Shown in pieces: positions 13,539-63,501 of a stretch of DNA of 64,000 bases. The notes beneath the pieces are model-generated. The model was not told where the DNA came from. It did no database searches and worked only from the letters and a program-made list of their open reading frames with translations. The translations under genes were made by a program, and so were the position numbers. How positions within the stretch are numbered: position 1 is the first letter of the stretch; each line of letters opens with the position of its first letter. This DNA comes from Ylistrum balloti (Eukaryota). The stretch spans positions 62,001 through 126,000 of the forward strand of contig NW_026782411.1 of NCBI RefSeq assembly GCF_031769215.1, written 5' to 3'.

Positions 13539-13618
13539 GAGCACATCCGTCCAGCGGATATTGTCACCACAGTGTTCACTAACACGACGCCATCTAGATC
13601 GGGATCACCTATAGAATG
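13539..13618 (+). CDS. Putative small exon, mostly 5'UTR, ending in the initiator ATG (13616-13618) of the predicted long FHOD isoform
   Basis: Acceptor TTTCCAG ends at 13538 (alternative TTTAG ends at 13527). Donor ATG|GTAAAC at 13619. In-frame TAG at 13595-13597 upstream, and A at -3. Joins exon 13810 in phase 0 across a 191-nt intron to give MRRRSYSVSS. Inference from signals only. Confidence 0.4.
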
Positions 13619-13809
13619 GTAAACACACGTTATTTTTAATGGCGCTAGGCCCTGTAATTTAACATGTGCATCTTAATTTTATTTTGAAACATAAGCTACT
13701 GTTCGAAAATATTGCACCACATTCCAAGAATCCTGTTGCGTTGCATAATATCTTGGCGATTGGCACCGCGGGCTGTAATTTATCAAAATGTACTGTTTAT
13801 TTTGTCTAG

Positions 13810-14274
13810 CGTCGTCGAAGTTACTCTGTCAGTTCTTCACGTCCCAGCATTCATGGTGCCTCTACTTCCGCCAAAGCACGTCCAGGTAGCCTTAGTCTTT
13901 CTTCTTCCGGTCCTACTAACCGATCAGTTTCAGCTGGTGGACGTGTGTCAGGTTTCGGAGCTGGACCATCTAGAACAGGGTCTCTCCAGTCAGGACTAAC
14001 CCCTAAAACTCCCAGTGGAGGGTACCAGTCCAGTACCGGGTATAGTAGCGCTGCATCTTACGGCAGTAAAAGTATAGCGGGTAGTGGTCCTAGTTATGGT
14101 GGAGTCCGGGCCGGAACTGACGTAGCTACTCTTCTAGCTGTTCCACGTGCCCGTAATAGCACTAGTGTTCACGTACCCAGTTCCGGCAGTGCCCGTGTTA
14201 GCTCAAGTGTTGGACCTAGAAGTCCTGTTGGGCGACCACCCCTGGTTGATAACACTAGAAAGCCTCCGGTCAGT
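13810..14274 (+). CDS. Internal coding exon, 155 aa, Ser/Gly/Arg/Pro-rich low complexity (RRRSYSVSSSRPSIHG...VDNTRKPPVS); putative N-terminal extension of the long FHOD isoform
   Basis: Acceptor TTTATTTTGTCTAG|C and donor AGT|GTAAGT. 465 nt open, phase 0-0, locally GC-richer than the flanks. Composition matches the giant exon at 54314. The ORF track shows only the part from 13945. Confidence 0.75.
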
Positions 14275-15129
14275 GTAAGTATGCTTGACCGCGTGGAGTG
14301 AAGTAATCCGGATATCCTTGTGCTTTCCAAGCCTTTTGTACCTTGGCGATATCGTTACGCCTAGACTCCCGTGTGAAACTGGGAAATGAGTTTTGATGAA
14401 ATTGCCCACGATTTCCTTCCCGATGTTGTCCTCCCTTGAGTGTTCAAACCATATTCTATGAAATTCCTGACTTTTCCTGCGTCACAACTCCTGGTTTAGA
14501 TCTATCCACAAAACAGACGACCTTTGACCTTGTTGTTGGTTGACTTACCTATTATTTTCTATTTCTACCATCTTTTCCCAACAGTTTTAAGTTAACCTGT
14601 TCTAGTTTTGTTTTACATGCTGTGTTTGGTTATGAACAGAATGCGAACGTTATTGCAAGGTCATCCCTGTATTTCGAATAACGACGCATATCACCATGAT
14701 AAAACAGAAATATACATAAAAATCAACTTGAAGAACAGGTAGATTCAAGCATTAGCGCTTTCATATTGTCAACATGCAAAGGTATGGTGGGTCGTCGTAA
14801 TCGTTGTAGCCGTCCTAACAATCAGTTTTGTGCGATGAATTCCTATTGCTCCATCAAACTCAAACGTCGTGCGAAGCTTCCTTGTGATATGTTACAATAG
14901 GGAGACGAGGAAGACAAATTATTTGTGTACGCTTACTTCAAAAACACTCAAACTTAAATTAGAATTTCTTGTTGAAGGCGCCTCCTTAAGATTCCTTTAA
15001 ATGGTTAATTTCAAGACAATGTCACATTTATCTTAAATGACAAAATTGTTTTTCTGCTGTTGACCTCACAAGCATGACATTAGATTCTGTGTATTCTATA
15101 CATGTACACCCTGATCTATACAGGGATGT

Positions 15130-15868
15130 TGGGACTGGATTGTACATTGTAATTCTGATACGGGGCCTGCACGGACTACTGGGTTGTATTTCTGTTACGG
15201 AGTCTATAAGGGGTACTGGGTTGTAATCCTGTTACGGGGTCTATAAGGGGTACTGGGTTGTAATCCTGTTACGGGGTCTATAAGGGGTACTAGGTTGTAA
15301 TCCTGTTACGTGGCCTATAAGGGGTACTGGGTTGTAATCCTGTTACGGGGCCTATAAGGGGTACTAGGTTGTAATCTTGTTACGTGGCCTATAATGGGTA
15401 CTAGGTTGTAATTCTGTTAAGTGGCCTATAAGGGGTACTAGGTTGTAATCCTGTTACGGGGCCTATAAGGAGTACTGGGTTGTGATCCTGTTACGGGGTC
15501 TATAAGGTGTACTAGGTTGTAATCCTGTTACGGGGCCTATAAGGAGTACTGGGTTGTGATCCTGTTACGGGGCCTATAAGGTATACTAGGTTGTAATCCT
15601 GTTACGGGGTCTATAAGGGGTACTGGGTTGTAATCCTGTTACGGGGTCTATAAGGAGTACTAGGTTGTAATCCTGTTACGGGGCCTATAAGGGGTACTGG
15701 GTTGTAATCCTGTTACGTGTTCTATACGGGTTACTAGGTTGTAATCCTGTTACGGAGCCTATAATAGGTACTAGGTTTAATTCCGATACGGGGTCTACAC
15801 AAGGTACTGGGGTTTTAATTCTGCTACAGGGTCTACACGAAGTACTGGGTGGTATATCAGTTACGGGG
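15130..15868. repeat. Tandem array, 37-bp unit (GGGGTACTGGGTTGTAATCCTGTTACGGGGTCTATAA), ~19 copies with degenerate edges
   Basis: CTATAAGGGG at 15241 and 15278. Confidence 0.96.
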
Positions 15869-19127: not shown

Positions 19128-19360
19128 TCGACGGATGGTGGGACAACTGGGTTTTATAACGGATGGTGGGACAACCATTTTCTATAATGGATGATGGGGC
19201 AAGTGGGTTTTATAGTGTTATCGTACTGAAATCCCTTGCATGACACTTTCTAAAGAGCATTTCAATGCAATACTCTGACAACTTTTTTCTAAACGACATT
19301 CCAATGTAATAATCAGACACCTTCTAAACAACATGTCAATGCAACACTCAGACACTTTCT
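19128..19360. repeat. Two short degenerate arrays (~28-bp x3, ACGGATGGTGGGACAAC...; ~36-bp x3, GACACTTTCTAAA...CAATGCAA)
   Basis: Visible imperfect repeats. Confidence 0.7.
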
Positions 19361-20060
19361 ATTCCGTGCTTTACTAAGATGTGACTTTTGGTTACTTTGT
19401 GAGTAGGATATTGAGGTTGGCATCTGATGTAGAGTGTGTCGTATCCTTTGATGGAAATGGTCAATAAATTTCTTTATTGTTGTTTAAAGACAAGACATCA
19501 ACGATACGTGAAAATGAAATGGAATGACATGGAACGGCTCTTGTTACCTGGTTTCATAGTTCTTCGGTACATTCAGCTTCATATAAAAACGAAAACAAGT
19601 TAGTTAAGACAGAGCACAGTTAGTTCTCATAACGTGTCGACGGTCTGTTCCAGGATCTAACCACAGAACTCTATAGAGTATTACCGTTCTCGGTAAAAAG
19701 AATGACAAAGTGTTAGAATTCTTATCGAATTTAATTTAAATAAACGTGTATATCAGAAAACCGATCAGTGTAAATAAAAATTAGACTGTAAACAGCTCTA
19801 AGTATGCTTACACACTAGATATTAAGATCTTGGTGAAGGCGTGGGAGGGGAGAGAAGCGAGGGGGTATGATTGCGAGGTGAGAAAGGGTACTAATGGAAT
19901 ACACTGTATCTGTTTTGTGCACATCTACCGATATATGCAGATGGCTGAGAAAGTCGTCGCAGTGCTTGCAACACGTGTGATGCTATTTATAGAAGACCAG
20001 ACTTTTTCTATCATTTATAGAAACTGAATGTTAATACAGAAATCACGCTGTCGTTGCAGA

Positions 20061-22353
20061 TACTGAGAGTTCATTATGTCATGGGATGGTTGTAATGTGG
20101 TATAATACTGAGAGTTAATGAAGACATGGGATGGTTGTAATGTGGTATAATACTGAGAGTTAATGAAGACATGGGATGGCTGTAATGTGGTATAATACTG
20201 AGAGTTAATGAAGACATGGGATGGTTGTAATGTGGTGTAATACTGAGAGTTAATGAAGACATGGGATGGTTGTAATGTGGTATAATACTGAGAGTTAATG
20301 AAAGACATGGGATGGTTGTAATGTGGTATAATACTGAGAGTTAATGAAGACATGGGATGGCTGTAATGTGGTATAATACTGAGAGTTAATGAAGACATGG
20401 GATGGTTGTAATGTGGTATAATACTGAGAGTTAATGAAGACATGGGATGGTTGTAATGTGGTATAATACTGAGAGTTAATGAAGACATGGGATGGTTGTA
20501 ATGTGTTATAATACTGAGAGTTAATGAAGACATGGGATGGTTGTAATGTGGTAGGATACTGAGAGTTAATGAAGACATGGGATGGTTGTAATGTGGTATA
20601 ATACTGAGAGTTAATGAAGACATGGGATGGTTGTAATGTGGTATAATACTGAGAGTTAATGAAGACATGGGATGGTTGTAATGTGGTATAATACTGAGAG
20701 TTAATGAAGACATGGGATGGCTGTAATGTGGTATAATACTGAGAGTTAATGAAGACATGGGATGGTTGTAATGTGGTATAATACTGAGAGTTAATGAAGA
20801 CATGGGATGGTTGTAATGTGGTATAATACTGAGAGTTAATGAAGACATGGGATGGTTGTAATGTGTTATAATACTGAGAGTTAATGAAGACATGGGATGG
20901 TTGTAATGTGGTAGGATACTGAGAGTTAATGAAGACATGGGATGGTTGTAATGTGGTATAATACTGAGAGTTAATGAAGACATGGGATGGTTGTAATGTG
21001 TTATAATACTGAGAGTTAATGAAGACATGGGATGGTTGTAATGTGGTATAATACTGAGAGTTAATGAAGACATGGGATGGCTGTAATGTAGTATAATACT
21101 GAGAGTTAATGAAGACATGGGATGGTTGTAATGTGGTATAATACTGAGAGTTAATGAAGACATGGGATGGTTGTAATGTGGTATAATACTGAGAGTTAAT
21201 GAAGACATGGGATGGTTGTAATGTGTTATAATACTGAGAGTTAATGAAGACATGGGATGGTTGTAATGTGGTATAATACTGAGAGTTAATGAAGACATGG
21301 GATGGTTGTAATGTGGTATAATACTGAGAGTTAATGAAGACATGGGATGGTTGTAATGTGGTAGGATACTGAGAGTTAATGAAGACATGGGATGGTTGTA
21401 ATGTGGTAGGATACTGAGAGTTAATGAAGACATGGGATGGTTGTAATGTGGTATAATACTGAGAGTTAATGAAGACATGGGATGGTTGTAATGTGTTATA
21501 ATACTGAGAGTTAATGAAGACATGGGATGGTTGTAATGTGTTATAATACTGAGAGTTAATGAAGACATGGGATGGTTGTAATGTGTTATAATACTGAGAG
21601 TTAATGAAGACATGGGATGGTTGTAATGTGTTATAATACTGAGAGTTAATGAAGACATGGGATGGTTGTAATGTGTTATAATACTGAGAGTTAATGAAGA
21701 CATGGGATGGTTGTAATGTGGTATAATACTGAGAGTTAATGAAGACATGGGATGGTTGTAATGTGGTATAATACTGAGAGTTAATGAAGACATGGGATGG
21801 TTGTAATGTGTTATAATACTGAGAGTTAATGAAGACATGGGATGGTTGTAATGTGTTATAATACTGAGAGTTAATGAAGACATGGGATGGTTGTAATGTG
21901 GTAGGATACTGAGAGTTAATGAAGACATGGGATGGTTGTAATGTGGTATAATACTGAGAGTTAATGAAGACATGGGATGGTTGTAATGTGGTAGGATACT
22001 GAGAGTTAATGAAGACATGGGATGGTTGTAATGTGGTATAATACTGAGAGTTAATGAAGACATGGGATGGTTGTAATGTGTTATAATACTGAGAGTTAAT
22101 GAAGACATGGGATGGTTGTAATGTGGTAGGATACTGAGAGTTAATGAAGACATGGGATGGTTGTAATGTGGTATAATACTGAGAGTTAATGAAGACATGG
22201 GATGGTTGTAATGTGGTATAATACTGAGAGTTAATGAAGACATGGGATGGTTGTAATGTGGTAGGATACTGAGAGTTAATGAAGACATGGGATGGTTGTA
22301 ATGTGGTATAATACTGAGAGTTAATGAAGACATGGGATGGTTGTAATGTGGTA
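20061..22353. repeat. Tandem array, 45-bp unit (TACTGAGAGTTAATGAAGACATGGGATGGTTGTAATGTGGTATAA), ~51 copies, very homogeneous
   Basis: 45-bp period (20341/20386); source of the 784-aa minus-strand ORF. Confidence 0.98.
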
Positions 22354-22390
22354 GCAAAGACTTTGACAATAAATAAGTAATAATTCGTTG

Positions 22391-23399
22391 AGGTTTGTAG
22401 AAGTTTACAGTTAATGTTGCTTACTGTCAGGTTATAGAAGTTTACAGTTAATGTTGTATATTGTCAGGTTATAGAAGTTTACAGTTAATGTTGTATATTG
22501 TCATGTTATAGAAGTTTACAGTTAATGTTGTGTATTGTCAGGTTATAGAAGTTTACAGTTAATGTTGTATATTGTCATGTTATAGAAGTTTAAAGTTAAT
22601 GTTGTTTATTGTCAGGTTATAGAATAGAAGTTTACAGTTAATGTTGTATATTGTCAGGTTATAGAAGTTTACAGTTAATGTTGTATATTGTCAGGTTATA
22701 GAAGTTTACAGTTAATGTTGTATATTGTCAGGTTATAGAAGTTTACAGTTAATGTTGTTTATTGTCATATTGTCAGGTTATAGTCAGGTTAAGAAATTAA
22801 CAGTTAATGTTGTATATTGTCAGGTTATAGAAATTAACAGTTAATGTTGTATATTGTCAGGTTATAGAAATTAACAGTTAATGTTGTATATTGTCAGGTT
22901 ATAGAAGTTTACAGTTAATGTTGCTTACTGTCAGGTTATAGAACTTTACAGTTAATGTTGTATATTGTCAGGTTATAGAACTTTACAGTTAATGTTGTAT
23001 ATTGTCAGGTTATAGAAGTTTACAGTTAATGTTGTATATTGTCAGGTTATAGAAGTTTACAGTTAATGTTGTATATTGTCAGGTTATAGAAGTTTACAGT
23101 TAATGTTGTATATTGTCAGGTTATATAGGTTAACAGTTAATGTTGTATATTGTCAGGTTATAGAAGTTTACAGTTAATGTTAACAGTTAATGTTGTATAT
23201 TGTCAGGTTATATAGGTTAACAGTTAATGTTGTATATTGTCAGGTTATAGAAGTTTACAGTTAATGTTGTTTATTGTCAGGTTATAGAAGTTTACAGTTA
23301 ATGTTGTATATTGTCAGGTTATAGAAGTTTACAGTTAATGTTGTATATTGTCAGGTTATAGAAGTTTACAGTTAATGTTGTTTATTGTCAGGTTATAGA
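22391..23399. repeat. Tandem array, 37-bp unit (TGTCAGGTTATAGAAGTTTACAGTTAATGTTGTATAT), ~27 copies
   Basis: Period 22681/22718; starts ~40 bp after the 45-bp array. Confidence 0.97.
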
Positions 23400-24664: not shown

Positions 24665-25260
24665 TAAAGCAGGCACGGGACGTACAATACGGGGTCTAAG
24701 CAGGCACGGGACGTATAATACGGGGTCTAAGCAGGCACGGGACGTACAATACGGGGTTAAAGCTGGCACGGAACGTACAATACGGGGTCTAAGCAGGCAC
24801 GGGACGTACAATACGGGGTTAAAGCAGGCACGGGACGTACAATACGGGGTCAAAGCATGCACAAAACGTACAATATGGGGCCACAGCAGACATAAAACGT
24901 ACAATACGGGGTCTAAGCAGGCACAAAACGTACAATACGGGGTCTAAGCAGGCACAAAACGTACAATACGGGGTTAAAGCATGCACAAAACGTACAATAC
25001 GGGTCAAAGCAGAAATAAAACGTACAATACGGGGTCTAAGCAGGCACGGGACGTACAATACAGGGTCTAAGCAGGCACGGGACGTACAATACGGGGTCTA
25101 AGCAGGCACAAAACGTACAATACGGGGTCTAAGCGGGCACAAAACGTACAATAAGGGGTCTAAGCAGGCACAAAACGTACAATACGGGGTCTAAGCAGTC
25201 ACGGGACGTACAATACGGGGTCTAAGCAGTCACGGGACGTACAATACGGGGTCAAAGCAG
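24665..25260. repeat. Tandem array, 31-bp unit (CGTACAATACGGGGTCTAAGCAGGCACGGGA), ~19 copies, degenerate tail to ~25435
   Basis: Period 25021/25052. Confidence 0.96.
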
Positions 25261-26944
25261 GGTCGTCGAATTAAGGGTCAAAGCAGGGGCGAGACGTAGA
25301 AATCGGATTCAAAATAGGGACATTGGGTTCGTGGTCAAAGCAGCGTCCAGATGCAGAAATCCGTGGTCTAAGCATGGACAAAACACAGAATCCAGAATCG
25401 AAACTTAGAAATCAGGGTTAAAGCAGGGACGAAACATATAGTTCAGCCGATTTTTATTGTCTCAGCGATCACAACATATTTCACAAGTGTTGTTTTAGCT
25501 GTAATTTTAATGTCATTACCATCAGGTATTTATTATCAGCATTATAAGATCGTCAAACTTGACCAGAGGTTAATAATTCATGATTACAGGGAATCCAACG
25601 ATATGAAAACAATATAAACTTACATCCTACATTTTCGATAAAACATATTGCAAATCATTGAAAATGAAAATAATTATGTCAGAAAAATTTAATCAGGTCT
25701 TGTAGGTTTTTCCGCGGCAAGGGAAGTAACTCCTACATGCTTGTCAGGACTTATCCCAATAAGCACAAAGCTGCTGATCTTTTAATGCGTTATTGGTCCA
25801 TATAAATTCGCAGTACAAATGTAATTTTATTGTAAAAAGTTCGATTTCAACAACAAAATCTAATTAGTTTTAGTTTTTTTTATCGCAAGATATTAAAATA
25901 TGTGAGACTCAGAGAAACGATATGACCAAATAGATAACTCCATCCATAGTATCTAAATAAATGTAACACTAACAGATATATTCTATAGTAATGCTTAATA
26001 GCCCCCAGGAAGCGGTTTTTCACTGCGTTAGGCCAATATATATTTTTTTCAAATTTTCTTGTTTTTCCTTCTTTTGTTAAGTGTTACAGATGATAACGCG
26101 TGTAGATTTTATAGAGCCATACAGATCTTGGACCGACAAATTCGTTTTCGTTTTTCGTTTTTTTTTTTTTTTTTTTGCTGTTATTTATTCATTGTCGGTA
26201 GCACCACGGGAAGACATGATATTTATAGAACAAAGTGTTAAATGGGGCTTTTATCAATGAATCGTGAAACTTGTTTATATTTTGTAGTAATCTCTATAGG
26301 TTGGATGGTATCATCTTCACTATAAATTGTCAAGTTTTCTTTTTGAGGGAAGATTATTTTCGATAATATATGGCCACTAAAGCTATTTTGAAGACAAATA
26401 ATCAAAATTTCGACACTTTTTTCCACAGTATCCTAACTTAACCCACACCGGGTTTTACATGAACGATAACCAGAGCCGTTGGTGGTGTGGATATTTTGAG
26501 TAAATAGATAAGCAGAGGATAGCCCTATATCATAAAAGTCGGTCCATCATACCGTTTACTTTTCACCTCCTCTAAGTACCGAAGCGAGAAATTAAATTAA
26601 AATACCATTATAAAATGGGTTTAGGTTTCAGTATCTGTGATCCCTTATCACACTTCACGTGCGCACGTGTATCTATAGGGATTGTAGCGCTATTACGTCA
26701 CAGACGCTCCAGATGAGCACTATCTGATTTAAAATATATGTCGGAACATAAAGTCAGCACCAGGGCGCCGTGCTGAAAACAGACATCTAATTTCTCTACT
26801 CATTAAAGAATACATGGAGAGATAATTTTCCTTAATCGAGTTATTTGAACATTTATGGCGATATCAACTCTAAGATTCCGTCTGATCAAACTTCTCGACT
26901 TCTCAAAGATGAATCGAGCGTACAGCACCGCATTTCAGCCTTTC

Positions 26945-27879
26945 TAAACTGAATCACGCGTAGAGTACCGCGTTTTAATCTGTGTAAACAACCATCGCGT
27001 ACAGTAACACATCTTTGCGTATTTAAACTGAACTTTGTGTACAAGAACACATCTTTACGTATTTAAACTGAACCTCGTGTACATTTAAACTAAACCTTGT
27101 GTACATTAACACATCTTTACGTATTTAAACTGAACCTCGCGTACAGTAACACATCTTCACGTTTTTAAACTGAACCTCGTGTACAGCAACACATCTATAC
27201 GTGTTTAAACTGAACCCCGTGTACAGTAACACATCTTTACGTATTTAAACTGAACCTCGTGTACAGTAACACATCTTTACGTATTTAACTGAACCTCGTG
27301 TACAGTAACACATCTTTACGTATTTAAACTGAACCTCGTGTACAGTAACACATCTTTACGTATTTAAACTGAACAACGTGTACAGTAACACATCTTTACC
27401 TATTTAAACTGAACCTCGTGTACAGTAACGAATCTTTACGTGTTTAAGCTGAACCTTGTGTACAGTAACACATCTTTACGTATTTAAACTGAACCTCGTG
27501 TACAGTAACGCATCTTTACGTATTTAAACTGAACCTCGTGTACAGTAACGCATCTTTACGTGTTTAAACTGAACCTCGTGTACAGTTACACATCTTTACG
27601 TATTTTAACTGAACCTCGTGTACAGTAACACATATTTACGTATTTAAACTGAACAACGTGTACAGTAACACATCTTTATCTATTTAAACTGAACCTTGCG
27701 TACAGTAACACATCTTTACGTGTTTAAACTGAACCTTGTGTACAGTAACACATCTTTACGTATTTAAACTGAACCTCGTGTACAGTAACGCATCTTTACG
27801 TGTTTAAACTGAACCTCGTGTACAGTTACACATCTTTACGTATTTTAACTGAACCTCGTGTATAGTAACACATCTTTAC
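26945..27879. repeat. Tandem array, 40-bp unit (TTTAAACTGAACCTCGTGTACAGTAACACATCTTTACGTA), ~23 copies
   Basis: Period 27301/27341; unrelated to the 40-bp array at 1-1209. Confidence 0.97.
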
Positions 27880-34586: not shown

Positions 34587-34643
34587 CCGTCATCATACGA
34601 TCGAGGGTACGGTAGCATCTCCAGCAGCCGCAGTCATGGCTCG
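34587..34643 (+). CDS. 57-nt coding exon PSSYDRGYGSISSSRSHGS; putative part of the long FHOD isoform
   Basis: Acceptor CCTTGATTTTTCAG|C and donor TCG|GTAAGT. Phase 0-0, open frame. Same S/G/Y/R composition as the neighbouring predicted exons. Confidence 0.72.
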
Positions 34644-46448: not shown

Positions 46449-47178
46449 TCGTTACAGAGAACAATGACACGACCTGTCTAATTGTTACAGAGAACAATGA
46501 CACCACCTGTCTAACTGTTACAGAGAACAATGACACCACCTGTCTAATTGTTACAGAGAACAATGACAACACCTGTCTAATTGTTACAGAGAACAATGAC
46601 ACCACCTGTCTAATTGTTACAGAGAACAATGACACCACCTGTCTAATTGTTACAGAGAACAATGACACCACCTGTCTAATTGTTACAGAGAACAAGGACA
46701 CCATCTGGGTAATTGTTACAGAGAACAATGACACCACCTGTCTAATTGTTACAGAGAACAATGACAACACCTGTCTAATTGTTACAGAGAACAATGACAC
46801 CACATGTCTAATTGTTACAGAGAACAATGACAACACCTGTCTAATTGTTACAGAGAACAATGACACCACCTGTCTAATTGTTACAGAGAACAATGACTCC
46901 ACATGCCTAATTGTTAAAGGGAACAATGACATCACCTGTCTACTTGTTAAAGGGAACACTGACATCAACTGTCTACTTGTCAAAGGGAGCAATGGCATCA
47001 CCTGTCTAATTGTTATAGATAACAATGACATCACCTGTCTAATGTTAAAGAACACAATGACATCACCTGTCTAATGTTAAAGGGAACAATGACATCACCT
47101 GTCTAATCGGTAAAGAGAACATTGATATTACATGTCTAGTGTTAGAGAGGACAATGATATCATCTGTCTAATATTTAA
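46449..47178. repeat. Tandem array, 33-bp unit (AATTGTTACAGAGAACAATGACACCACCTGTCT), ~22 copies, diverging rightwards
   Basis: 33-bp period; source of the 11-aa repeat ORF 46390-47055. Confidence 0.97.
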
Positions 47179-51989: not shown

Positions 51990-53900
51990 GACGTACAGTG
52001 AAATGATGACGGATGTTTAAAGTGAAATGATGACAGATGTATACAGTGAAATGATGACGGATGTTTAAAGCGAAATGATGACAGATGTGTACAGTGAAAT
52101 GACGACGGAAATGTACAGTGTAATGTTGACGGATGTGAATAGTGTAATGTTGACGGATGTGTAAAACGTAATGTTGTTGGATGGGCAGATTGTAATGTTC
52201 ACGGTTGGATATTTAGAATGCAATTTTGACGGATGTTTAGAATGCAATGTTGACGGATGTTTAGAATGCAATGTTGACGGATGTTTATAATGCAATGTTG
52301 ACGGATGTTTAGAATGCAATGTTGACCGATGTTTAGAATGCAATTTTGACGGATGTTAAGAAAGCAATTTTGATGGATGTTAAGAATGCAATTTTGACGG
52401 ATGTTAAGAATGCAATGTTGACGGATGTTTAAAATGCACTTTTGACGGATGTTTAGAGTGCAATGTTGACGGATGTTTAGAATGCAGTGTTGACGGATGT
52501 TTAGAATTAGAATGCAGTGTTGATGGATGTTTATAATGCAATGTTGACGGATGTTTAAAATGCACTTTTGACGGATATTTAGAATGCAATGTTGACGGAT
52601 GTTTAGAATGCAATGTTGACGGATGTTTAGAATGCAATGTTGACGGATGTTTAGAATGCAATGATGACGGATATTTATAATGTAATGTTGACGGATGTTT
52701 ATAATGCAATGTTGACGGATGTTTAAAATGCACTTTTGACGGATATTTAGAATGCAATGTGACGGATGTTAATAATGCAATGTTGACGGGTGTTTATAAT
52801 ACAATGTTGACGGATGTTTATAATGCAATGATGACGGATGTTTATAATGCAATTTTGACGGATGTTTATAATGCAATGTTGACGGATGTTTAGAGTACAA
52901 TGTTGACGGATGTTTAGAATGCAATGTTGACGTATGTTTATAATGCAATTTTGACGGATGTTAAGAATGCAATTTTGACGTATGTTTATAATGCAATTTT
53001 GACGGATGTTAAGAATGCAATGTTGACGGATGTTTAGAATGCAATGTTGACATATGTTTATAATGCAATTTTGACGGATGTTAAGAATGCAATTTTGACG
53101 GATGTTAAGAGTGCAATGTTGACGGGTGTTTATAATGCAATTTTGACGGTTGTTTATAATGCAATGTAAGCGGATGTTTATAATGCAATGTTGACTGATG
53201 TTTAGAATGCAATGTTGAAGTATGTTTATAATGCAATGTTGACGGGTGTTTATAATGCAATTTTGACGGATGTTTAGAATGCAATGTTGACGGATGTTTA
53301 GAATGCAATGTTGACATGTTTATAATGCAACATTGACGGATGTTTAGAATGCAATGATGAAGGATGTTTATAATGCAATGTTGACGGATGTGTACAATGT
53401 AATGTTGTTTGATGGGCAGAGTGTAATGTTTACGGTTGTATAGTTTGTAATGATCACTGGTGTGTAGGCTGTGATGTTGACGGATTTTTAGAATGCAATG
53501 TTGACTGATGTTTAGAATGCAATGTTGACTGATGTTAAGAATGCAATGTTGACTGATGTGTACAGTGTAATGTTGACGATGTGTATTGTGTTATGTTGAC
53601 AGATGTGTACAGTGTAATGTTGATGGGTATGTATTGTGTTATGTCGACAGATGTGTACAGTGTAATGTTGACGGTGTGTATTGTGTTATGTTGACAGATG
53701 TGTACAGTGTAATGTTGACGGTGTGTATTGTGTTATGTCGACAGATGTGTACAGTGTTATGTTGACGGTGTGTATTGTGTTATGTTGACAGATGTGTACA
53801 GTGTAATGTTGACGGATGTGTAAAGTGTAATATTATAGGATATGTAGAGTGTAATGTTGAAGGATGTGTAGTTTGTTATGTAGACGGATGGATAGAGTAA
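51990..53900. repeat. Tandem array, 24-bp unit (AATGCAATGTTGACGGATGTTTAG), ~75-80 copies, with a ~47-bp dimeric subarray at ~53560-53830
   Basis: 8-aa repeat ORFs (HSKHPSTL) on the minus strand; dimer period 53653/53700. Confidence 0.96.
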
Positions 53901-54313: not shown

Positions 54314-57300
54314 CTTTACGACAACATGGGGTCCGGGAAGGGCTATGGCGGTTCTACCAGTAGGTATGGGAGTGGTGTAGGAACCAGTAGTTATCTCAGT
54401 CCGTCGTACGGCTCGCAAAACAAAAGCGGGTCGTCTTACGGATCACCAACAAAAACCTACTCATCAGGCTACCAACAACCCTCATCATCCGGGTCTCGAT
54501 ACGGTTACGGCGGCGGCTCCGTCCGAGACCGGATACAGAAAATTTCGTCAGCGGAGGCAACGCGCAACACGGGTAAAGATACCGGAACTAGTATGTATAC
54601 GCCGTTAAGCAGTAGAGGGACCACACAAACAAGGGGAGATCACTATGGAGGCGGTGGTGGATATGACAAATATTCGTCACGGAGTGCGGGATCAGACCCT
54701 TATGGAAGCAAATCTGGATATTTGTCAGATTATGGTGGGAGTACAAGGTCTTATAGTTCATGGGATCGAGGGTCGTCAAGGTCAGGTCGCAGTTACGGAA
54801 CCGCAAGTCGCGAGACTTCGCCTGTGAGTCAGCGATCGTCACGCTACGAATACGGAACAAAAGCTGCCACCCCGTCTCCGTACACCACTTACAAAAGTAG
54901 TTCAGAGGTCTCGCCACCAGTTAACAGGAAGTACGACCGCCAGGTGTCGCGATCATCGGACGTCGAGTATTCTGCTAGGGATAGAGGTGACAGATATGAG
55001 AGGAGGCGGTCGTCACGTGACTACATTCGGCCGCCTCCACGGAAGAAAGTTTCCGTGTCTTCGGACAGTGACGAGGACGACAGTGCGCCCGAGGCGGAAA
55101 AAGAAGGCTTCAAGGGTCGGTACCTTATATCGAGGGGAACTTCGCCAATGCCTGAAAATGAAGCCCCGAAACGGGATGCACGTTACAGAAAGGACAAAAA
55201 GTCAGTTTCGCGGACCAAACGTATAAGGCCACTGAGCAACAGAGACTCGCGGCGTGAGAGTCGGTATAGGGACTATCGAAACCCTACTCTTGTCGATTGT
55301 TCTACTCAAACACATATGGACCAACCCACCTCCCGCCGGAGTCGGCACTCGTCTGGCAGCTATGGCGGCGAGGCGAGCGGTGACCTAAGGGAAAAGGCGG
55401 CTATGGCTGCCTTGGCCATGATGGATAGTGGAGGTGGAGACGGCAAAGATGACTCATTCTATAAATATCGCGATAAGTTTGACAAAAACAAACAGCCAAT
55501 GTCACCAGGTTATAACGCAACGGATAGTCCGAGGAGCAAACGATTTTCGTATCGCGATACATCAGCTAAAGATGAAAGTTTGGGAGAAATTCCTCCAGAG
55601 AAATCATGGCGTCAGTCTGTGTACGGAACGTCTACTCCAATGAAGAAACCTGAGGAGGAGGAAGTTCCAAGGCGACGACGCCGGCAGCAGGCTAATGTAG
55701 AGCCTGACTATGACAACGCTGAGGAGGATGCAAGACCAAGTTCACGTCGTGGTGAGAGACGTTCCCAGGGGTCAGACAGAGATCGACGCTCACAGCGGGA
55801 GATGGCTCAGGATTACAGTCGATCCAACTCCCGAGATAGTCTTCTCGACGACAAACCCGCGAGGAGACGAAGGCACGGCAGTAAGGAGTTGCTGGATGCA
55901 CCTCCTGAACCAGAAGTTATTGTCCACTCTCCGGAAGAGGTTCCGGTACAGCGACGAAGACGGCATGGAAGTAAAGAACTTCTAGATGAACCTACTGACC
56001 CCTTGACTCAGGAGACCATTTCGTTAAGAGATAGCATTGAGAAAGTACAACAATGGAAGCAAAACCTACCAAATCCAGACCCGTACTATGAAGACCATCC
56101 TCCACAGTCTCAACCGCCGACTCGACATCTCGAAACTGGCTTCCCAAGGAGTGATTCGGGCGAGTATTTTTCTGCTCATGATTATCCAGTGAATCCGAAT
56201 TCCAGGCCAAATGAGAATAAGGTCATGTCTCCAGAAAGAAGCAGGGGTAGAGACTCTCGTGGGTCTGGTAATTACGGTCGTGAGCAGGAACATCCTCCTT
56301 ACCGTGATCACTCCCCGGGGAGAAGACAGTATCGACGTGATGATTCACACGATAACGTGTTTTCTGGTGACGATGACTTAGATGGACATTACCGCAACAA
56401 AGACTATCGCAAGTCAGAACTAAATAGGGGCGAAGGTGAGCACTATGCGATCGCTCGAGATGAGTCTCCCAACAGGATGCGTCGTTCACACAGACCACCC
56501 TCTGGTGACGGTGCGCGTCGTTTGACGCGAGAAGGATCTAGGGAAGACAATCTAGATGATAGAAAATCAAGGCGAGATGATTATGATCGCGGACACACGA
56601 GCGACAGCTCTCAGTTTGGATTTAATAGAGAAAGTTCGCCAAATAGACCACATTCGCAGAAGAAGCATGGCAGCAGGCCAAACTCTCGGGAGGGCATGCT
56701 TGACGACAGCCGTGTTCGACGAAGCAACTCACGTGAGGGCATGCTCGACGAGGGAAAAGTGCGACGGAGCAATTCTCGTGAGGGAATGTTGGATGAGGGA
56801 AAAGTACGACGAAGCACTTCTCGTGAGGGCATGTTGGATGAGGGGAAAGTGCGACGGAGCAATTCGCGAGAGGGGATGTTGGATGATGGGAAAGCACGAC
56901 GTAGCAACTCGCGCGAGGGCGTTTTAGAGGAGAAGATTGTTGAGTATCCTCCCAGTTACAGTCGGCCAGGACAGCTTGCCATCTCAAACGAAAGTTTGGC
57001 GCACATGAGCAACTCGGCGTCCGCCGGATCCATTAACTCGGTTGTCCCAGATGACGGCACACTCCACGCGACGAAGTCACCTAATTCTGTAACATCAAAC
57101 GAAGGACTTCACTCACCCGTGTCCCAGTCTCGTCTCCACGCCCCGTCTCCAGGGGCCAACAAAGGACTCCCAGACCTGGTGCCCGGAGGACCCAAGACAG
57201 GACCGGAAGGTAAGGATCAAAAGCGTCAGTCACAACGCTACGTCCGCCGTACTAAAAGTGGATACATTGGCAAAGTACAAGATATTGACAGGTTTCTTGG

Positions 57301-57437
57301 ACCCGCTAGTAAGGACGAATGCGGGGGTACGGCTGGACAGACTTCCGGCAAAGATAAATCTGACAGACCCCCAAATCTGATGGACACTCCTGTTCCCAAA
57401 CATCCTGACCCTCTCAAGCCATCTCCCAATGTCCCAG
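54314..57437 (+). CDS. Giant 3,124-nt coding exon (~1,041 aa), intrinsically disordered S/G/Y/R-rich then R/S/D/E-rich; putative N-terminal extension of the long FHOD isoform
   Basis: Acceptor TTTTTCATTTTAG|CTT in phase 0 (LYDNMGSGKG...). Single uninterrupted frame at ~50% GC against AT-rich flanks. Internal amino-acid repeats diverge synonymously. Donor CCAG|GTAAAT is phase 1. ATG 54326 (ACAACATGG) is a possible alternative start. Confidence 0.93.
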
Positions 57438-59041
57438 GTAAATACTTGCCTGTGCTTTGTGCAAAAGTTATGACGTCATACATGGTTTGGTGGCTGTGTT
57501 GTGGCCTAGATGTCTTGGCGGCAGAGTTTTTATTGTTTAACTGAAATAATACCATTTGTTGTTATTACAGCTTGTCTGGTATGAATAGGATAGCATTACT
57601 ATGTTTTCATTTAATCTTTTTATATTGTGGCTTATGAAAGTTTTATTTATAAATGATGACGTCATGACTGTTTTGTGCTGCTTCCGCTTCTACTTGTGCT
57701 AACACTGAATTTCTACTTACTCTCTCTACCATGGTAAAGCTTCCCCGACGTCCGGGGGTGGGGGAGATTTCATAACAATATGTCTAACATCGGTTAGTTA
57801 GCGTCGTGTCTTAGTATTAACCAATTAGTTTAAAAAGGAATGAATGCTTACTTCATTTACACTTTTGGATTTCTGTGAATGATAATTCACACACTAGATA
57901 CAATTCGGACCACTCTAAATCAAGTTATATTTCAAAGTTTAAGAGGTTTTTTTTCGGTTTGTCTCTTTTAAATATCTCATAATGGACATTCTGCATATGT
58001 TTCTGTCATTGTAGATCTAAAATAATCTATGAATTATATTAACGATAAAAAAGGAAATTTCATTTATAATGCGCGTATTTATATATCTTCACATGGTCTT
58101 ATCGAACAACGATAGCAATACTTATTACTACTCAAAAGATGCCACCTTTCACAAATCATTAAACTTACAACCACCAAAAAAAATGTAAAACAAAATCATC
58201 ACCGTGTGCTTTGCATACCCAGAGTGTGGCACCTCCAGTCCTGCATGTTAGCAGTTGTTTTTATTTACATCCGTAGTTGATGAAACCAACTTGCACCAAT
58301 TGACTTCATCAGTCCCCATGGTTAAAACTAATAATAGCTAATAGAATACGATAGGCGGTGACTAACATTCCGACTCCCTTCCCTGTACAGCCAAGTATTG
58401 TCCTATGTCCGTGTGACCGTTGGTTTCGGTGGCTGTTTTCTCCTTGGCGGTTTGTTATATTGAGCTGTTGTGGTTTAAGTAAAGAAGTCAATTGTAGCTA
58501 TTTAACCGCAAGAATGTTGAGATACAGTTTTTAAGCTTTTGACTAATAGAAAAAAGTTTTCTCAGCTGTGTGTTATATCAGCATGAACGTTATCTTTATC
58601 AACGTTACATCACGATGGTGGCCGGTCCATTTACAGGTTGGTCATTTTTATTTCATGTATATGCAAAAAAACAATTTATGCCTAAAATTTGGCCGTCTAA
58701 ATCGACATGCCGTAGCTGCTATGTGATTAAAATCCATGCAAAACTTAAATACTATATTATTGCTTCTAAATATAGACAGTAGCATGGTCAACATCGCTGG
58801 CTTTAATTAGTATACTACGCATATCCTGTCAATAGGACCTGTTTTGTAAACATATTATTAGAATTATTTACCGGGAGGAAATTCTGTTTGATAGAGGATT
58901 GTTTTATATGGCTTTGTCGCAATGGTTACAGGTTAATTTGGAGAAAATTTCAGTACTTATGACCACGTGTAAAAAATAATTTTGTGGGTAAACTTTGTCA
59001 ACATACATTGATGTTCTCGTCTGATTACGCCTTCCCTCCAG

Positions 59042-59361
59042 AAGAAAAATTGGTGGACATTGAGGAGCCCAAGGGTGGACAGTCGATTTTGTCGACGCGT
59101 CCGTCAACCTCCAGGAGGAAAACGGAATCCGTGACGTCACCAGTGTCACAATCGGGGTCGACTGGGCAGCAAATGTTTAACGTCCTCAAACGGAACAAGG
59201 GTTCAGTAACTATCACAGATATCCTTGACCTTTGCTATGGCCGGAGTCAAGGTTCAGGAAAGGTCATCAGAGTTCCAGGAGTCACGGAGTCGGACTATAG
59301 TTTTAAAGGATATGACACCGTTAACGAGCTTCTCGAGAGCATGAACGTCAACGTGAGAAAG
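59042..59361 (+). CDS. Internal coding exon (EKLVDIEEPKGG...GYDTVNELLESMNVNVRK); last isoform-specific exon before the shared FHOD exon
   Basis: Acceptor CCTTCCCTCCAG|AA is phase 1 and matches the phase-1 donor at 57437 (G|AA = Glu). Donor AAG|GTGAGT is phase 0 and matches the acceptor at 63377. Confidence 0.88.
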
Positions 59362-61039
59362 GTGAGTTAGTTTATACTGTTGATAGATATTGTTTGTTCT
59401 AACATAACATGTTCAAGATGAACTTCAGTGAACTTTATGACTTTTGTTGAATGCTTGTGGACTGTTTTTTATGATGCAAACAGTGTAATTAATCCGTTGG
59501 CTCGGTTAATCGCGTCAATAATTTCAACGTTAGTTCCTGTTGCTAAGATATTTTTCATACAGTCTTTAGCAAATTTCAACGAATTATCACCACAAGTCAC
59601 ACGATTGAAATACGTGAATCCTAACTGGGGGTCACTTGCCAAGAGATTTGGGATCAAACAATAAACACACTTAAAACAATAATTGGTATCCACTGAGCTC
59701 GGGAGAACCAAAGAATTTTACGGCACTTGAAAATCGGAAAATTTAGCGACAAAAGAAAAATGGAATAGTTTAGTATAAATGAAGGTTTTTGATAAACCAA
59801 ATGAAGTGAGGCAACATATCAATTTTTTGCGTTTTCAATCAACTTCTTAAAACCTTGCAAAAGGTATATCACTTGTACAAAACAACGATAGCAGGTTAAC
59901 TTTTAACAGCATCCGTTGTTGGATTTTAGACCAAGGGAAATAACTCTTGTATGATTGTGTGATTCTCGAGTTACTTCCCCTATATCAATGTTCATACATT
60001 CAGTGTCGATCATCTTCAGTTACTTATTTATTTATTTTGGTATGGCAACGATCATCGTTTAATTCGATCTACCCTCGATATTCTCTGGTGCTGTAGAAAT
60101 ACTGGTATATTTGTAAATCAATAGTCGCAATATGTAACTAGATTCTTTTTTTCTGTGGACTACTTGTGAAATTATGAACAACCTTGGGTAACCGTCTACT
60201 ATGAAGGTTTGTTTTCTATGCTCACGGTTAACCGTTCCGATGACCTAACAAGCTTAAAAAAATATTAATAAAAGTATATGATAAATCTATATGGTTGACT
60301 GTCTGAACTCAGCATGATTTTTTGTCCTATTCCGGATGACATTATAGGGTCATATGTATACATAACCGAACATCCCTGATTAGTCTCCAACAGTAACAAT
60401 AAGTCTTTGTGAAACGGTTTCATTTTGACATACTTAATAATATGATGTGAAGAGGTCCCTTTATGAGAGTATCCGCTTCAAAACAAACTATTGTGTTGAT
60501 GTTTTTATAGTATAGATAACGGCATAAATTGCACGCCAAATAACAAGATGCTAGTTATTGTCATGTAAAAATACATGCGTACCGTTTTTATTAAATTTTA
60601 TTATATTTTACGACATATATTTGACGTAAATGTATTTTATGTATTTATGGCATACTTGAAATAGTCTTTTAAGTCCGTGATTAAACAAAGTAAGTTTTTT
60701 CAATGTCCTTGACTTAATACTACTCTAGTATTTAGGATTTAATTAAGAATTTCGGTGTGAAGTTCTAGCACATTTTTTTTTTCAACACAAACTTTATTGT
60801 ATAAATATATACCAATGGATGAGATAACAGGCATTGCCTATATAAACCTTCTCCATTTGTGGTTTATCTATATCAGGAGTGATTATAAGTTATCTAATTA
60901 TAATGTTTTCATGATTATATTTCACTAACAGACACTCACTCATCTTTCACATGTGTTTTCGTAAAACGCATTTTTTTTCTTATCGTCCGTATAACAAATC
61001 AAATTGAACCAACTCGTGAAAATACTAATTAATTTATTC

Positions 61040-61329
61040 CGAGTTACCTGTCTGCTACTCCCCCGCCTGATTGCGGCTTCCGCTGTGGTTCCGAGTGAAT
61101 CATCCCACATCTTTTTTTATGTTATCGTGATTAGCCTGAGTGATGATAACAGAATTTCCGAGTCAGCCGCTGCAACGGCCGGTTTATCGCCTCACTGTGG
61201 CGTGCCACTCCGCCGTGAGCGTTTCACCCGCAAGGATGTCTAGTTTCACCTGTTCACCTGGTGGCGTATGAATATGCAAGTGAAGGGTTCAGGGGTCAAC
61301 TCGGCGTGCTGTCAGTAGCACATTAAAAC
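61040..61329 (+). promoter_or_regulatory. CpG/GC-enriched probable promoter and 5'UTR of the short FHOD isoform
   Basis: Local CpG enrichment relative to the AT-rich flanks. In-frame TAA at 61324-61326, then strong Kozak context AAAACATGG. TSS not determinable. Confidence 0.5.
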
Positions 61330-61494
61330 ATGGCGACGTTTATGTGTAGAGTGCAGTACCTGGATGATACGGACCCTTTTGCGAGTACAAATTTCCCTGA
61401 ACCTACGCGTCCACCAAATTTTTTGTTTCACATCACCGTTCCTCTGATAAGTCAGATTGGTGGTGTACACAAACTTTTAGGAGCCCCACACAAA
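61330..61494 (+). CDS. FHOD: FHOD-family formin, first coding exon of the canonical (short) isoform; N-terminal half of the GBD
   Basis: MATFMCRVQYLDDTDPFASTNFPEPTRPP...QIGGVHKLLGAPHK closely matches the vertebrate FHOD3 N-terminus as recalled (MATLACRVQFLDDTDPFNSTNFPEPSRPP...QLAGVHRLLQAPHK). Donor AAA|GTAAGT, phase 0. Confidence 0.97.
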
Positions 61495-63376
61495 GTAAGT
61501 GAAGTTAGGCGCTGTGCCACCTGCTCGGAGATTCACATGTGTGTAAACAAAACCTTGGGATTTTACGTTACCTTTATTTTCTCCTCAACAAACACGGGAT
61601 TAAGCTGTTGACACCTCTGATCGGAAATGAATTCGATAACCTGGATATATAATGTTTTAATTGTAGCAATGTAATGTGTATAATTCCGTTGGTAAAAGGC
61701 TAGCGTGCCGGTAAAGAATTTAAGAATCAGCTGATCCCTACAGATAACAGACCTGAGAGGCGGGTACACCTGTGCTGATCAGCCTCTGCATTATTTGAAG
61801 GGAGATAGAGATTAATGTGTATTTTATTTGTCCTTTATATAATTTGATTGTTGAATTTCGTAGATGATTTAAACATATTTTTTTATTTACAATTTGAATT
61901 CCACTGAAGTAAGTTATGGGAGCTACTAATACTATGAAAAAGTCTGATATTGGAACATCATTGCACATATGTTAGATTTGTCAAATAGGGTTTCCCTGGA
62001 ATGTATTGGATTGATAATATCAAAATCATTGAAGTTCAAAGTAAATTATTAGATGTATCTAAGGTAAAAATATCTGAGTTTAGTTTTAAAGTTTTATCTA
62101 CTTTCTTTTTATTCTGATAAGCATCTTCTGTTAATCACTAATGTTAGACAGCTCTAAACAACCATGGGATGTGATACACATGTAATGACTTAGGAGCATA
62201 TGTGATGTAGTGGTTTATTGTGATGATAATTAAATGCTGCAGTGGCTTTAGAATGAACAAGAATAAGATAGCAGTGTTTTGTTATTGGCTCAGACTTACA
62301 AGTACTAGCTCTTCTCTTATCAGTTCTGTGGTATGAGGGTACTTCCTAAGTAACTAAGAATACACAGTTGTTTTCTCCGTCTGTATCTTTTGAACATGTA
62401 TTTTCAATGGAACTGCGTAGTAGCAACAAGTTGTTGATAGATTACAAACATAAAACTCTAAAAATAATTCAGTCTGCTTACGTATATAAAATTAAATCAT
62501 ATTAACTGAAATGACATGTATGTACCACACAGCACTGTTTCTATAAATAGATAACGTCTCACTGCTATTGCAGATGATTTGGTCACTTTTATTACCTCTT
62601 AACATATTCATTCTGGACGACGTTATAATTGAACATATTGTATGATTCATGGTTAGCAGTGTTATTTTTATCTTGTTTATGTTTCAAGTTTGTATATATA
62701 AATACATTAATCTGTGTGACGTGTGTTGGCAGTTGTATAAAGAACAATTTTGTTCACACCACTACACAATACATCATAGATGTTTAATAAATGCTACTCT
62801 TCACAAGAATTACATGCCAACCTATTCATAGAATCATAGCCATTTGCTTTTAAGGAGGGGAGCATTTTACATCAGCCAACTTAACAATAAAATATTTTAA
62901 TTTGATAACAATCTCTAACTGAAGTTTAAGTGTACATATGATACAGTGATTTTTGTTGGATTTTGTCTGGTGAGTCCGGAGCACCATTTCCATAATTTTG
63001 ATGAGTCTACTTGTAAAGAGTTAAAGCAAGTCCCACAGGAAAAGCATGAGTCGAAAACAAAAATAATTGGGTCACAAGTATCACTGTAATATACTATGGG
63101 AGCAGTAGTTTTTGTAGGATTTTTCCTGGTGAATCCCATTTCCAAACTTTTGATGAGTTCAGTTACAAATAGTTATAGTGGGTTCTTAAAATTTGAGCAT
63201 CACAGCATAAGCATGAATCCATGACTCAAATATTTGAAACCCAAATATCACTGAAGGGTATTATTACTGTGAAACAATTTTGGTACTTTATATATTAAAG
63301 ATATTGAACTTTGAACAAATAGATAGATGATGACTATAATTATTTAACTTTCTCATGATTCTTTTGATTTTACTAG

Positions 63377-63501
63377 CTTGAGGACTGCGCTCTACAGATA
63401 TATCGTTATCACAATGGCTCCCAGGGAGACTATGGGACATACTTGGATTTGGAATCCACCGTAGATGAACAGGCTGACGAACTTGAGGGCTTCCAAGACC
63501 A
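63377..63501 (+). CDS. FHOD: FHOD-family formin, second (shared) coding exon LEDCALQIYRYHNGSQGDYGTYLDLESTVDEQADELEGFQD
   Basis: Acceptor TTTTGATTTTACTAG|CTT is phase 0 and donor CA|GTAAGT is phase 2. Matches FHOD3 LDDCTLQL..NGAYLDLEATLAEQRDELEGFQD as recalled. Absent from the ORF track. Confidence 0.97.

What the first reader, a model, noticed from the sequence alone, without database searches (positions are those of the whole stretch)
13616..63501. Hidden ~1,320-aa N-terminal extension: long FHOD formin isoform that bypasses the canonical first exon
Seen: five upstream segments chain in frame via canonical GT-AG sites: ATG 13616-18 (phase 0), 13810-14274 (0-0), 34587-34643 (0-0), 54314-57437 (0-1) and 59042-59361 (1-0). 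They then join the FHOD exon at 63377 (phase 0), giving 1,323 aa before LEDCALQ. The chain cannot enter exon 61330 in frame: there is an in-frame TAA at 61324, and the nearby AGs ending at 61315 and 61318 are out of frame. So 59042-59361 and 61330-61494 behave as mutually exclusive partners of 63377. Established, from memory: Drosophila Fhos has long isoforms with a large N-terminal extension linked to Z-disc localisation in muscle (Shwartz et al. 2016). Inference: this locus has an analogous long/short switch, possibly a muscle isoform. Automated annotation could easily split it into an unknown gene plus FHOD.
Basis: partly seen in the sequence, partly recalled or inferred. Interest (0 to 1): 0.8.

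Follow-up and report, generated by a model that had tools for sequence, protein, structure and literature searches.

The report
Long FHOD formin isoform, already annotated
The scallop FHOD formin gene does encode a long isoform whose roughly 1,250-1,320-residue disordered N-terminus replaces the first 55 residues of the normal protein, but RefSeq already annotates this isoform on this genome and in dozens of other molluscs, so it is real but not hidden.

Summary
All six segments chain in frame through GT-AG sites, giving 1,323 aa before LEDCALQ, and the chain cannot enter exon 61330 in frame.

The chain is 100% identical (aa 1-1140 and 1217-1364) to RefSeq XP_060077995.1, 'uncharacterized protein LOC132557517 isoform X2' of Ylistrum balloti (2,461 aa, with FH3 and FH2). 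So the window is that scallop's FHOD locus, and the long isoform is already annotated.

The one difference is the donor. RefSeq uses an internal donor at 57209|GT, not 57437|GT, and so skips 76 conserved residues. Argopecten and Mizuhopecten models keep them.

The same join (...K|LEDCALQ) appears in RefSeq models of more than 25 molluscs and a nemertean. It also appears in an intron-free 7.2-kb Mytilus-like contig.

Four annelid-like or unidentified contigs share the layout: extension ORF, then canonical exon 1, then common exon 2.

No RNA data exist here for this species; the only run is genomic DNA.

AlphaFold predicts the ubiquitin-like GBD for the short form but not for the long form.

No relative of the extension was identified in insects, so the Drosophila Fhos parallel is one of architecture only. 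A muscle role was not tested.

The same scan holds one other note on this window (s1-234416).

The parts
13616..13618 (+). Putative start codon at the 3' end of the long isoform's first exon (ATG|gtaaac)
   Evidence: RefSeq models of three scallops start M-RRRSYSV, so an exon must end in ATG. This is the nearest ATG|GT upstream of 13810, and the next is at 12974. The position is not proven.
13810..14274 (+). Exon encoding 155 Ser-rich residues (RRRSYSVSSSRPS...); detectable only in scallops
   Evidence: Identical to P0045 residues 2-156. BLASTP matches to this part come only from Argopecten and Mizuhopecten. There are no Pfam hits.
34587..34643 (+). 19-aa micro-exon (PSSYDRGYGSISSSRSHGS)
   Evidence: Present in P0045. 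The motif is conserved in Tegillarca, Mytilus, Ostrea, Saccostrea and gastropods, but absent from the C. virginica X8 model. It may therefore be a cassette exon.
54314..57209 (+). Giant exon as used by RefSeq (965 codons plus 1 base), disordered and rich in S, R, G, P and D, with conserved short motifs
   Evidence: 100% identical to P0045 up to residue 1140, followed by the donor GGAAG|gtaagg. It has homologs in molluscs, a nemertean and annelids. There are no Pfam domains.
57210..57437 (+).
   Evidence: Skipped in Ylistrum RefSeq X1-X3 but present in Argopecten P0046 and Mizuhopecten P0042. The equivalent segment is present in Mytilus P0029 and the contig L001, and absent from P0023.
56717..56920 (+). 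45-nt tandem repeat inside the giant exon (4.5 copies of RRSNSREGMLDEGKV)
   Evidence: TRF. The repeat is visible in the translation and in the other scallops.
59042..59361 (+). Last extension-specific exon (106 aa), with the conserved module KG.VTI.DIL.LC...IRVPG...F.GY...ELLE..V.V.K; phase 1 to 0
   Evidence: Identical to P0045 residues 1141-1247. It is conserved in the 25 long isoforms of alignment A2 and in annelid-like ORFs. If the following intron is not spliced, the frame reads VS and then stops.
61330..61494 (+). Canonical first coding exon of the short isoform (MATFMCRVQYLDD...APHK), the first half of the GBD
   Evidence: Pfam Formin_GBD_N positions 2-52, E 9e-22. The in-frame TAA at 61324 blocks entry from upstream. 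The same 55-aa exon product occurs from fish FHOD3 to molluscs.
63377..63501 (+). Common exon 2 (LEDCALQIYRYHNG...), the second half of the GBD and the acceptor shared by both isoforms
   Evidence: Pfam Formin_GBD_N positions 53-88, E 4.9e-12. Identical to P0045 residues 1248-1288.

Best explanation
The window holds the 5' half of the single FHOD-family formin gene of the scallop Ylistrum balloti (LOC132557517). The gene has two alternative coding starts.

The proximal start is exon 61330-61494. It yields the conventional formin, whose first 55 residues form the first half of the ubiquitin-like GBD.

The distal start lies about 48 kb upstream. It yields a long isoform in which those 55 residues are replaced by about 1,250-1,320 residues. 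These come from a scallop-specific Ser-rich exon, a 19-aa micro-exon, a 2.9-3.1-kb giant exon with two alternative donors, and a 106-aa exon. Both routes splice in phase 0 to exon 63377.

The extension is mostly disordered and carries conserved short motifs. It is conserved in molluscs, a nemertean and annelids, and is always placed upstream of canonical exon 1.

Inferred, not shown:
- The long form lacks a folded GBD, so it is probably localised or regulated through its N-terminal region rather than through the GBD.
- By analogy with fly Fhos, it may serve in muscle.
For: - Frame, splice sites and phases are verified.
- The chain is 100% identical to RefSeq XP_060077995.1 at residues 1-1140 and 1217-1364, and that protein carries precomputed FH3 and FH2 Pfam domains.
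- The chain aligns end to end with the Argopecten and Mizuhopecten long isoforms at 87-90% identity, starting from residue 1.
- The same ...K|LEDCALQ join is seen in models of more than 25 molluscs and of Lineus.
- Logan contig L001 (SRR13891787) is 7,207 nt long and carries an uninterrupted 2,007-aa ORF running from the giant exon through the join to FH2, so it is intron-free.
- Loci L002, L004, L005 and L006 all show the extension ORF, then canonical exon 1, then the LEDCALQ exon, on one strand.
- The AlphaFold short-form control reproduces the FHOD1 GBD plus FH3: 3DAD, TM-score 0.94 (normalised by the target), rmsd 2.3 A over 337 columns. The long form matches 3DAD well only over FH3 (224 columns, rmsd 1.1 A), and LEDCALQIYRY is modelled as a helix.
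Against: - There is no RNA evidence from this species. The only retrievable run (X1) covers the introns evenly and so is genomic DNA.
- RefSeq models are predictions, and I could not see their supporting reads.
- The library type of SRR13891787 was not checked. It is taken as RNA only because the contig has no introns.
- The exact first exon (the ATG at 13616) is unproven.
- The long-form AlphaFold model has only moderate confidence (mean pLDDT 77; below 50 for residues 83-109) and rests on 25 sequences, so 'no GBD fold' is tentative.
- Function and tissue are pure analogy.
Confidence: 0.9

Rival explanations
1. The upstream exons form a separate gene for a disordered protein of about 1,320 aa. 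It would end two codons into the intron after 59361 (...RKVS-stop). The fusion to FHOD would then be an artefact of gene prediction.
For: - Reading through the donor at 59361 gives VS and then a stop.
- Several public models are extension-only: Lottia LOTGIDRAFT_159013, which ends ...DVSKVS, and Owenia CAH1779578.1, which is modelled apart from the FHOD model on the same contig.
- No RNA from this species was available.
Against: - The intron-free Mytilus-like contig L001 joins the extension to GBD, FH3 and FH2 in one ORF.
- Phase compatibility and position directly upstream of FHOD exon 1 are conserved in molluscs and in annelid-like loci.
- RefSeq joins them in more than 25 species.
Confidence: 0.05
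2. The 106-aa exon encodes a replacement for the first half of the ubiquitin-like GBD, so the long isoform still has a complete, variant GBD with swappable halves.
For: - The exon sits exactly where exon 1 would join.
- Its last ~60 residues are the best-conserved part of the extension.
Against: - AlphaFold models this part as three short helices and turns the following LEDCALQIYRY strand into a helix. The short-form control, run the same way, gives the beta-grasp.
- Foldseek aligns the long model to FHOD1 well only over FH3 (compared).
- hhalign finds no similarity between the alt-exon profile and the canonical exon 1 profile (probability 0.05%).
Confidence: 0.12
3. The lophotrochozoan extension is homologous to the 'large exon' extension of insect Fhos/knittrig, inherited from a protostome ancestor, rather than an independent gain.
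For: The architecture is the same. A distal promoter and a large 5' coding exon replace a short N-terminus: 63 residues in the fly (PMC5061545) and 55 here.
Against: - The profile search of 1.84 billion representative proteins gave only 91 hits. Every hit that could be named was a mollusc, nemertean or annelid.
- The insect extension is described as repetitive with a Trp-Trp repeat (PMC4601495). Trp is 0.3-0.8% of the distant homologues examined, and only two Trp columns are invariant in the extension alignment.
- No insect sequence could be fetched for a direct comparison.
Confidence: 0.2

Closest known systems
RefSeq LOC132557517 isoforms X1-X3 of Ylistrum balloti (XP_060077993.1, XP_060077995.1, XP_060077997.1), with orthologous long isoforms in Argopecten irradians, Mizuhopecten yessoensis, oysters, mussels, clams, gastropods, chiton, octopus and Lineus
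   Same: The same gene. It has the identical start (MRRRSYSV...), the same micro-exon, giant exon and 106-aa exon, and the same join to LEDCALQ.
   Different: It is named 'uncharacterized protein', not FHOD.
Drosophila Fhos (knittrig) long isoforms PH/PI/PJ (Shwartz et al. 2016, PMC5061545; Bechtold et al. 2014, PMC4601495)
   Same: Alternative 5' exons from a separate regulatory region replace a short N-terminus (63 aa in the fly) with a large, domain-free N-terminal region appended to the common FHOD core.
   Different: No sequence relationship was found. The fly extension is described as having a Trp-Trp repeat and as specific to Neoptera. The fly form is shown to localise to the Z-disc and to be needed in flight muscle; nothing of that kind is known here.
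Human FHOD1 N-terminal GBD-FH3 (PDB 3DAD; complex with nesprin-2G, 6XF1)
   Same: The short isoform encoded here is predicted to have the same fold: the Mytilus control matches 3DAD at TM-score 0.94. Exons 61330 and 63377 together make up the Pfam GBD_N domain.
   Different: The long isoform lacks the residues of the first half of that domain and is not predicted to form it.
Vertebrate FHOD3 muscle isoform (Iskratsch et al. 2010, cited in PMC4601495)
   Same: Isoform-level specialisation of an FHOD formin. The Iskratsch 2010 title describes a muscle-specific FHOD3 isoform.
   Different: From memory, that isoform differs by a small internal exon near the FH2 domain, not by a replaced N-terminus.

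Membership tests
FHOD-family formin | N-terminal FHOD-type GBD (Pfam PF18382, Formin_GBD_N) | tested here: met
   Exon 61330-61494 matches profile positions 2-52 (E 9e-22) and exon 63377-63501 matches positions 53-88 (E 4.9e-12).
FHOD-family formin | FH3_FHOD1-3 (PF24959) and FH2 (PF02181) downstream in the same protein | tested here: met
   These lie outside the window. P0045, which is 100% identical to the window's chain, carries precomputed PF24959, PF18382 and PF02181.
Lophotrochozoan long FHOD isoform (annotated in RefSeq, not described in papers) | Homologous giant exon and 106-aa exon lying upstream of canonical exon 1 | tested here: met
   Homologs at E down to 1e-201. The profile search recovers molluscs, Lineus and annelids. 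The same order of elements is seen in L002, L004, L005 and L006.
Lophotrochozoan long FHOD isoform (annotated in RefSeq, not described in papers) | Extension spliced to the LEDCALQ exon, skipping canonical exon 1 | tested here: inconclusive
   Met in the RefSeq models of this genome and in an intron-free Mytilus-like contig. No RNA of this species could be examined, because run X1 is DNA.
Insect Fhos/knittrig long N-terminal extension | Sequence homology to the insect 'large exon' with its Trp-Trp repeat | tested here: not met
   The profile search gave 91 hits, and none was identified as an arthropod. Trp is rare and there is no W-W repeat. A direct comparison with a fly sequence was not possible.
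Insect Fhos/knittrig long N-terminal extension | Z-disc localisation and a requirement in muscle | not testable with these tools
   This needs tissue RNA, antibodies or tagged constructs.

The most novel reading that the evidence does not exclude
The two-start design of FHOD genes is an ancestral protostome feature. In this design a distal giant exon gives a disordered N-terminus that replaces the first half of the GBD. The lophotrochozoan and insect extensions would then descend from one ancestral exon, diverged beyond recognition. In both, the long form would be the sarcomere-targeted isoform that works without a GBD. The published view that the extension is specific to Neoptera would be wrong.
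Probability: 0.2. Interest if true: 0.55.

Novelty: already known. Interest (0 to 1): 0.27.

Why it matters
For this window it matters little. The isoform is already in RefSeq for this genome and for many molluscs.

The comparative result is modestly useful. A long FHOD N-terminus of about 1,000 disordered residues with conserved short motifs is shared by molluscs, a nemertean and annelids, with the same nested gene layout. The formin literature I could find treats such an extension as peculiar to Neopteran insects (PMC4601495, PMC5061545) and does not mention lophotrochozoans.

The result also flags public models that split the gene (Lottia, Owenia) or truncate it (Tegillarca). And it suggests a testable idea: the long form lacks a folded GBD.

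Tried and rejected
- **RNA evidence.** The look-up of sequencing runs on the giant exon returned one run (X1). Read laying on 57502-63501 showed even coverage of the introns with heterozygous variants, so X1 is genomic DNA with no junction information. The single read-laying run was then spent, so the upstream junctions could not be examined either.
- **Exon duplication.** hhalign of the alt-exon profile against the canonical exon 1 profile gave probability 0.05%, so this idea was rejected.
- **Variant GBD.** AlphaFold does not support the idea that the alt exon completes a variant GBD or Foldseek.
- **Naming the distant hits.** Two cluster-member runs gave names only for Owenia. A paper search for GCA_013332715 found nothing. 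The last word search added only Paralvinella. The divergent hits P0183, P0185, P0200 and P0214 remain without a taxon.
- **Pfam.** Pfam finds nothing above threshold in the extension. The one hit is a sub-threshold RICTOR_phospho match (15 bits against a cutoff of 27), taken as noise.
- **Fly sequence.** No Drosophila Fhos sequence could be fetched with these tools, so no direct fly-mollusc alignment was made.
Full report
**1. Observation**

The six segments are 13616-18, 13810-14274, 34587-34643, 54314-57437, 59042-59361 and 63377-63501. Each has an AG before it and a GT after it. The joined sequence has no stop codon, and 1,323 codons precede LEDCALQ.

Exon 61330-61494 reads MATFMCRVQYLDD...APHK and is followed by GTAAGT. 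There is an in-frame TAA at 61324. The two nearby AGs (ending at 61315 and 61318) put the reading out of frame and into stops.

Pfam places Formin_GBD_N positions 2-52 on exon 61330 and positions 53-88 on exon 63377. The two exons therefore split the FHOD GBD in the middle.

The giant open frame (1,076 codons from stop to stop) has a G+C of 0.47-0.49, against about 0.31-0.43 in most other 2-kb bins of the window.

**2. Identity of the locus**

A word search with the giant exon found homologs at E values down to 1e-201.

A second search used a longer query, so that proteins of up to 2,796 aa were allowed. It returned RefSeq long isoforms of 2,000-2,650 aa in many taxa:
- Bivalves: Mytilus, Crassostrea, Ostrea, Saccostrea, Mya, Mercenaria, Dreissena, and the scallops Mizuhopecten, Argopecten and Ylistrum.
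- Gastropods: Patella, Haliotis, Biomphalaria, Physella and Littorina.
- Others: a chiton, octopods and the nemertean Lineus.

It is 100% identical to XP_060077995.1 of Ylistrum balloti over residues 1-1140 and 1217-1364. That protein is named 'uncharacterized protein LOC132557517 isoform X2' and is 2,461 aa long.

The window is therefore the FHOD locus of that scallop, and the long isoform is already annotated on this genome. Isoforms X1-X3 differ only in the last few C-terminal residues.

**3. The one difference from RefSeq**

RefSeq ends the giant exon at 57209 (GGAAG|gtaagg) rather than at 57437 (CCCAG|gtaaat). Both donors keep phase 1.

The 228 nt between them encode 76 residues (KSGYIGKVQDIDRFL...NLMDTPVPKHPDPLKPSPNVPE). 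These residues are present in the Argopecten and Mizuhopecten models and are conserved across molluscs.

In Mytilus, models with and without the corresponding segment coexist: P0029 and the contig L001 have it, and P0023 lacks it.

I read this as an alternative 5' splice site. Both forms are plausible in Ylistrum.

**4. Transcript evidence**

For this species there is none. The only run that holds the giant exon (X1) covers exons and introns of 57502-63501 alike, so it is genomic DNA.

For a relative there is one piece of evidence. Logan contig SRR13891787_7446 (L001) is 7,207 nt long. It carries a single 2,007-aa ORF running from the middle of the giant exon through the 106-aa exon, the join ...VDVKK|LEDCALQ, and on through FH3, FH1 and FH2 to the C-terminus.

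An ORF that crosses so many exon boundaries without an intron must come from spliced mRNA. I did not check the run's library type.

**5. Wider distribution**

I aligned the extension from 20 molluscs and Lineus (alignment A1, 1,018 profile positions). I then searched 1.84 billion representative proteins with it.

Only 91 proteins scored at E <= 0.001. Those that carry a name are molluscs, Lineus, and the annelids Owenia and Paralvinella.

A group of unnamed ORFs from ENA, Logan and NCBI contigs shares a variant of the last module (...KPPW[VI]EDEEDR.F.GY...LED.G.D.KK). These ORFs end just after KK, reading straight into the intron. They are most like the Paralvinella protein, so they are probably annelid.

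Four such contigs were examined. In each, the extension ORF is followed on the same strand by the canonical exon MAT[FL]QCRVQYL...APHK and then by the LEDCALQ exon.

In Owenia the extension and the FHOD core are annotated as two genes on one 34.9-Mb contig. In Lottia the extension is a separate model.

No hit could be assigned to an arthropod.

**6. Structure**

I folded residues 1180-1540 of P0045, which run from the conserved end of the 106-aa exon to the end of FH3, using 25 long isoforms. Results for the long form:
- Mean pLDDT is 77.
- The extension part forms three short helices.
- LEDCALQIYRY is modelled as a helix.
- Residues 83-109 have low confidence.
- Foldseek matches FHOD1 (3DAD) well only over FH3: 224 columns at rmsd 1.1 A.

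As a control I folded the short Mytilus isoform in the same way, using 12 sequences. It gives the beta-grasp GBD (strands 3-10, 30-34, 59-66, 72-77 and 108-113). It matches 3DAD over 337 columns at rmsd 2.3 A, with a TM-score of 0.94 normalised by the target.

hhalign sees no similarity between the alt-exon profile and the exon 1 profile.

The long isoform therefore probably has no folded GBD. This is a prediction of moderate confidence, not a demonstration.

**7. How it most likely works**

Shown:
- There are two alternative coding starts.
- Both donors are in phase 0 onto the acceptor at 63377.
- An in-frame stop prevents read-in to exon 61330.
- The extension is 17% Ser, 12% Arg and 10% Gly, with no Pfam domain.
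- It carries conserved islands such as GYLSDYGG, SWR..VYG, PLTPE.LSLRDSIEKV..WKQ, LPNKDFRKS.LN and SSSDAFSRD.SPN.

Inferred:
- The distal start has its own promoter.
- The extension is a disordered docking or regulatory region.
- Loss of the GBD half changes how the formin is recruited.

By analogy only: in Drosophila the long Fhos isoform localises to the Z-disc and is the form needed in flight muscle. The short form, with a 63-residue N-terminus, sits at the M-line (PMC5061545; PMC7039190). Nothing here tests tissue or localisation.

**8. Comparison with what is known, and novelty**

Bechtold et al. (PMC4601495) describe the fly extension as one large exon with a Trp-Trp repeat and conclude that it is specific to Neoptera. 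Shwartz et al. repeat this.

A survey of animal formins (PMC5047451) does not mention an FHOD extension in lophotrochozoans. I found no paper that does.

The feature is thus in sequence databases but apparently not in the literature. For the window itself the verdict is 'already known'.

The architecture is the same as in flies, but membership in the fly extension family failed the only test I could run.

**9. Verdict**

The gene structure is real, with confidence about 0.9. It is already annotated, so interest is low to moderate.

The most novel reading still open is that the two-start design is ancestral to protostomes.

Noticed in passing
window 57209/57210 and 57437/57438: There are two in-phase donors 228 nt apart at the end of the giant exon. 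Ylistrum RefSeq uses the proximal one, while the Argopecten and Mizuhopecten models use the distal one. Mytilus models exist with and without the corresponding conserved segment. This is a likely alternative 5' splice site.
   Followed up: partly
window 34587-34643: The 19-aa micro-exon (PSSYDRGYGS...) is present in most mollusc models but absent from the C. virginica X8 model. It may be a cassette exon.
   Followed up: no
window 56717-56920: A 45-nt tandem repeat inside the coding giant exon gives 4.5 copies of RRSNSREGMLDEGKV. Copy number looks different in Mizuhopecten and Argopecten.
   Followed up: partly
window 7-1208, 8587-12850, 15147-15868, 20060-23399, 24667-25261, 27083-27879, 33115-33879, 41686-42897, 44379-45308, 46447-47172, 48824-50054, 52002-53890: The region upstream of the gene and its two long introns are packed with minisatellite arrays (periods 21-117 nt, up to 79 copies). 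These arrays explain most of the long 'ORFs' on either strand and the bins with strong GC skew.
   Followed up: partly
P0154 and P0076 (Owenia fusiformis, same 34.9-Mb contig); P0022 (Lottia gigantea): Public annotations model the extension as a gene separate from the FHOD core, so these are probably mis-split.
   Followed up: partly
L005 (Logan SRR23372228 contig, 21.6 kb): This is a very compact FHOD locus of an unidentified animal. The extension ORF, exon 1, FH3 and FH2 all lie within about 9.5 kb, followed by ASC-type (PF00858) channel ORFs.
   Followed up: no
L001 3-386: The Mytilus-like contig has a second called ORF, of 127 aa, that overlaps the start of the main ORF. This may be an assembly frameshift or a splice variant inside the giant exon.
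   Followed up: no
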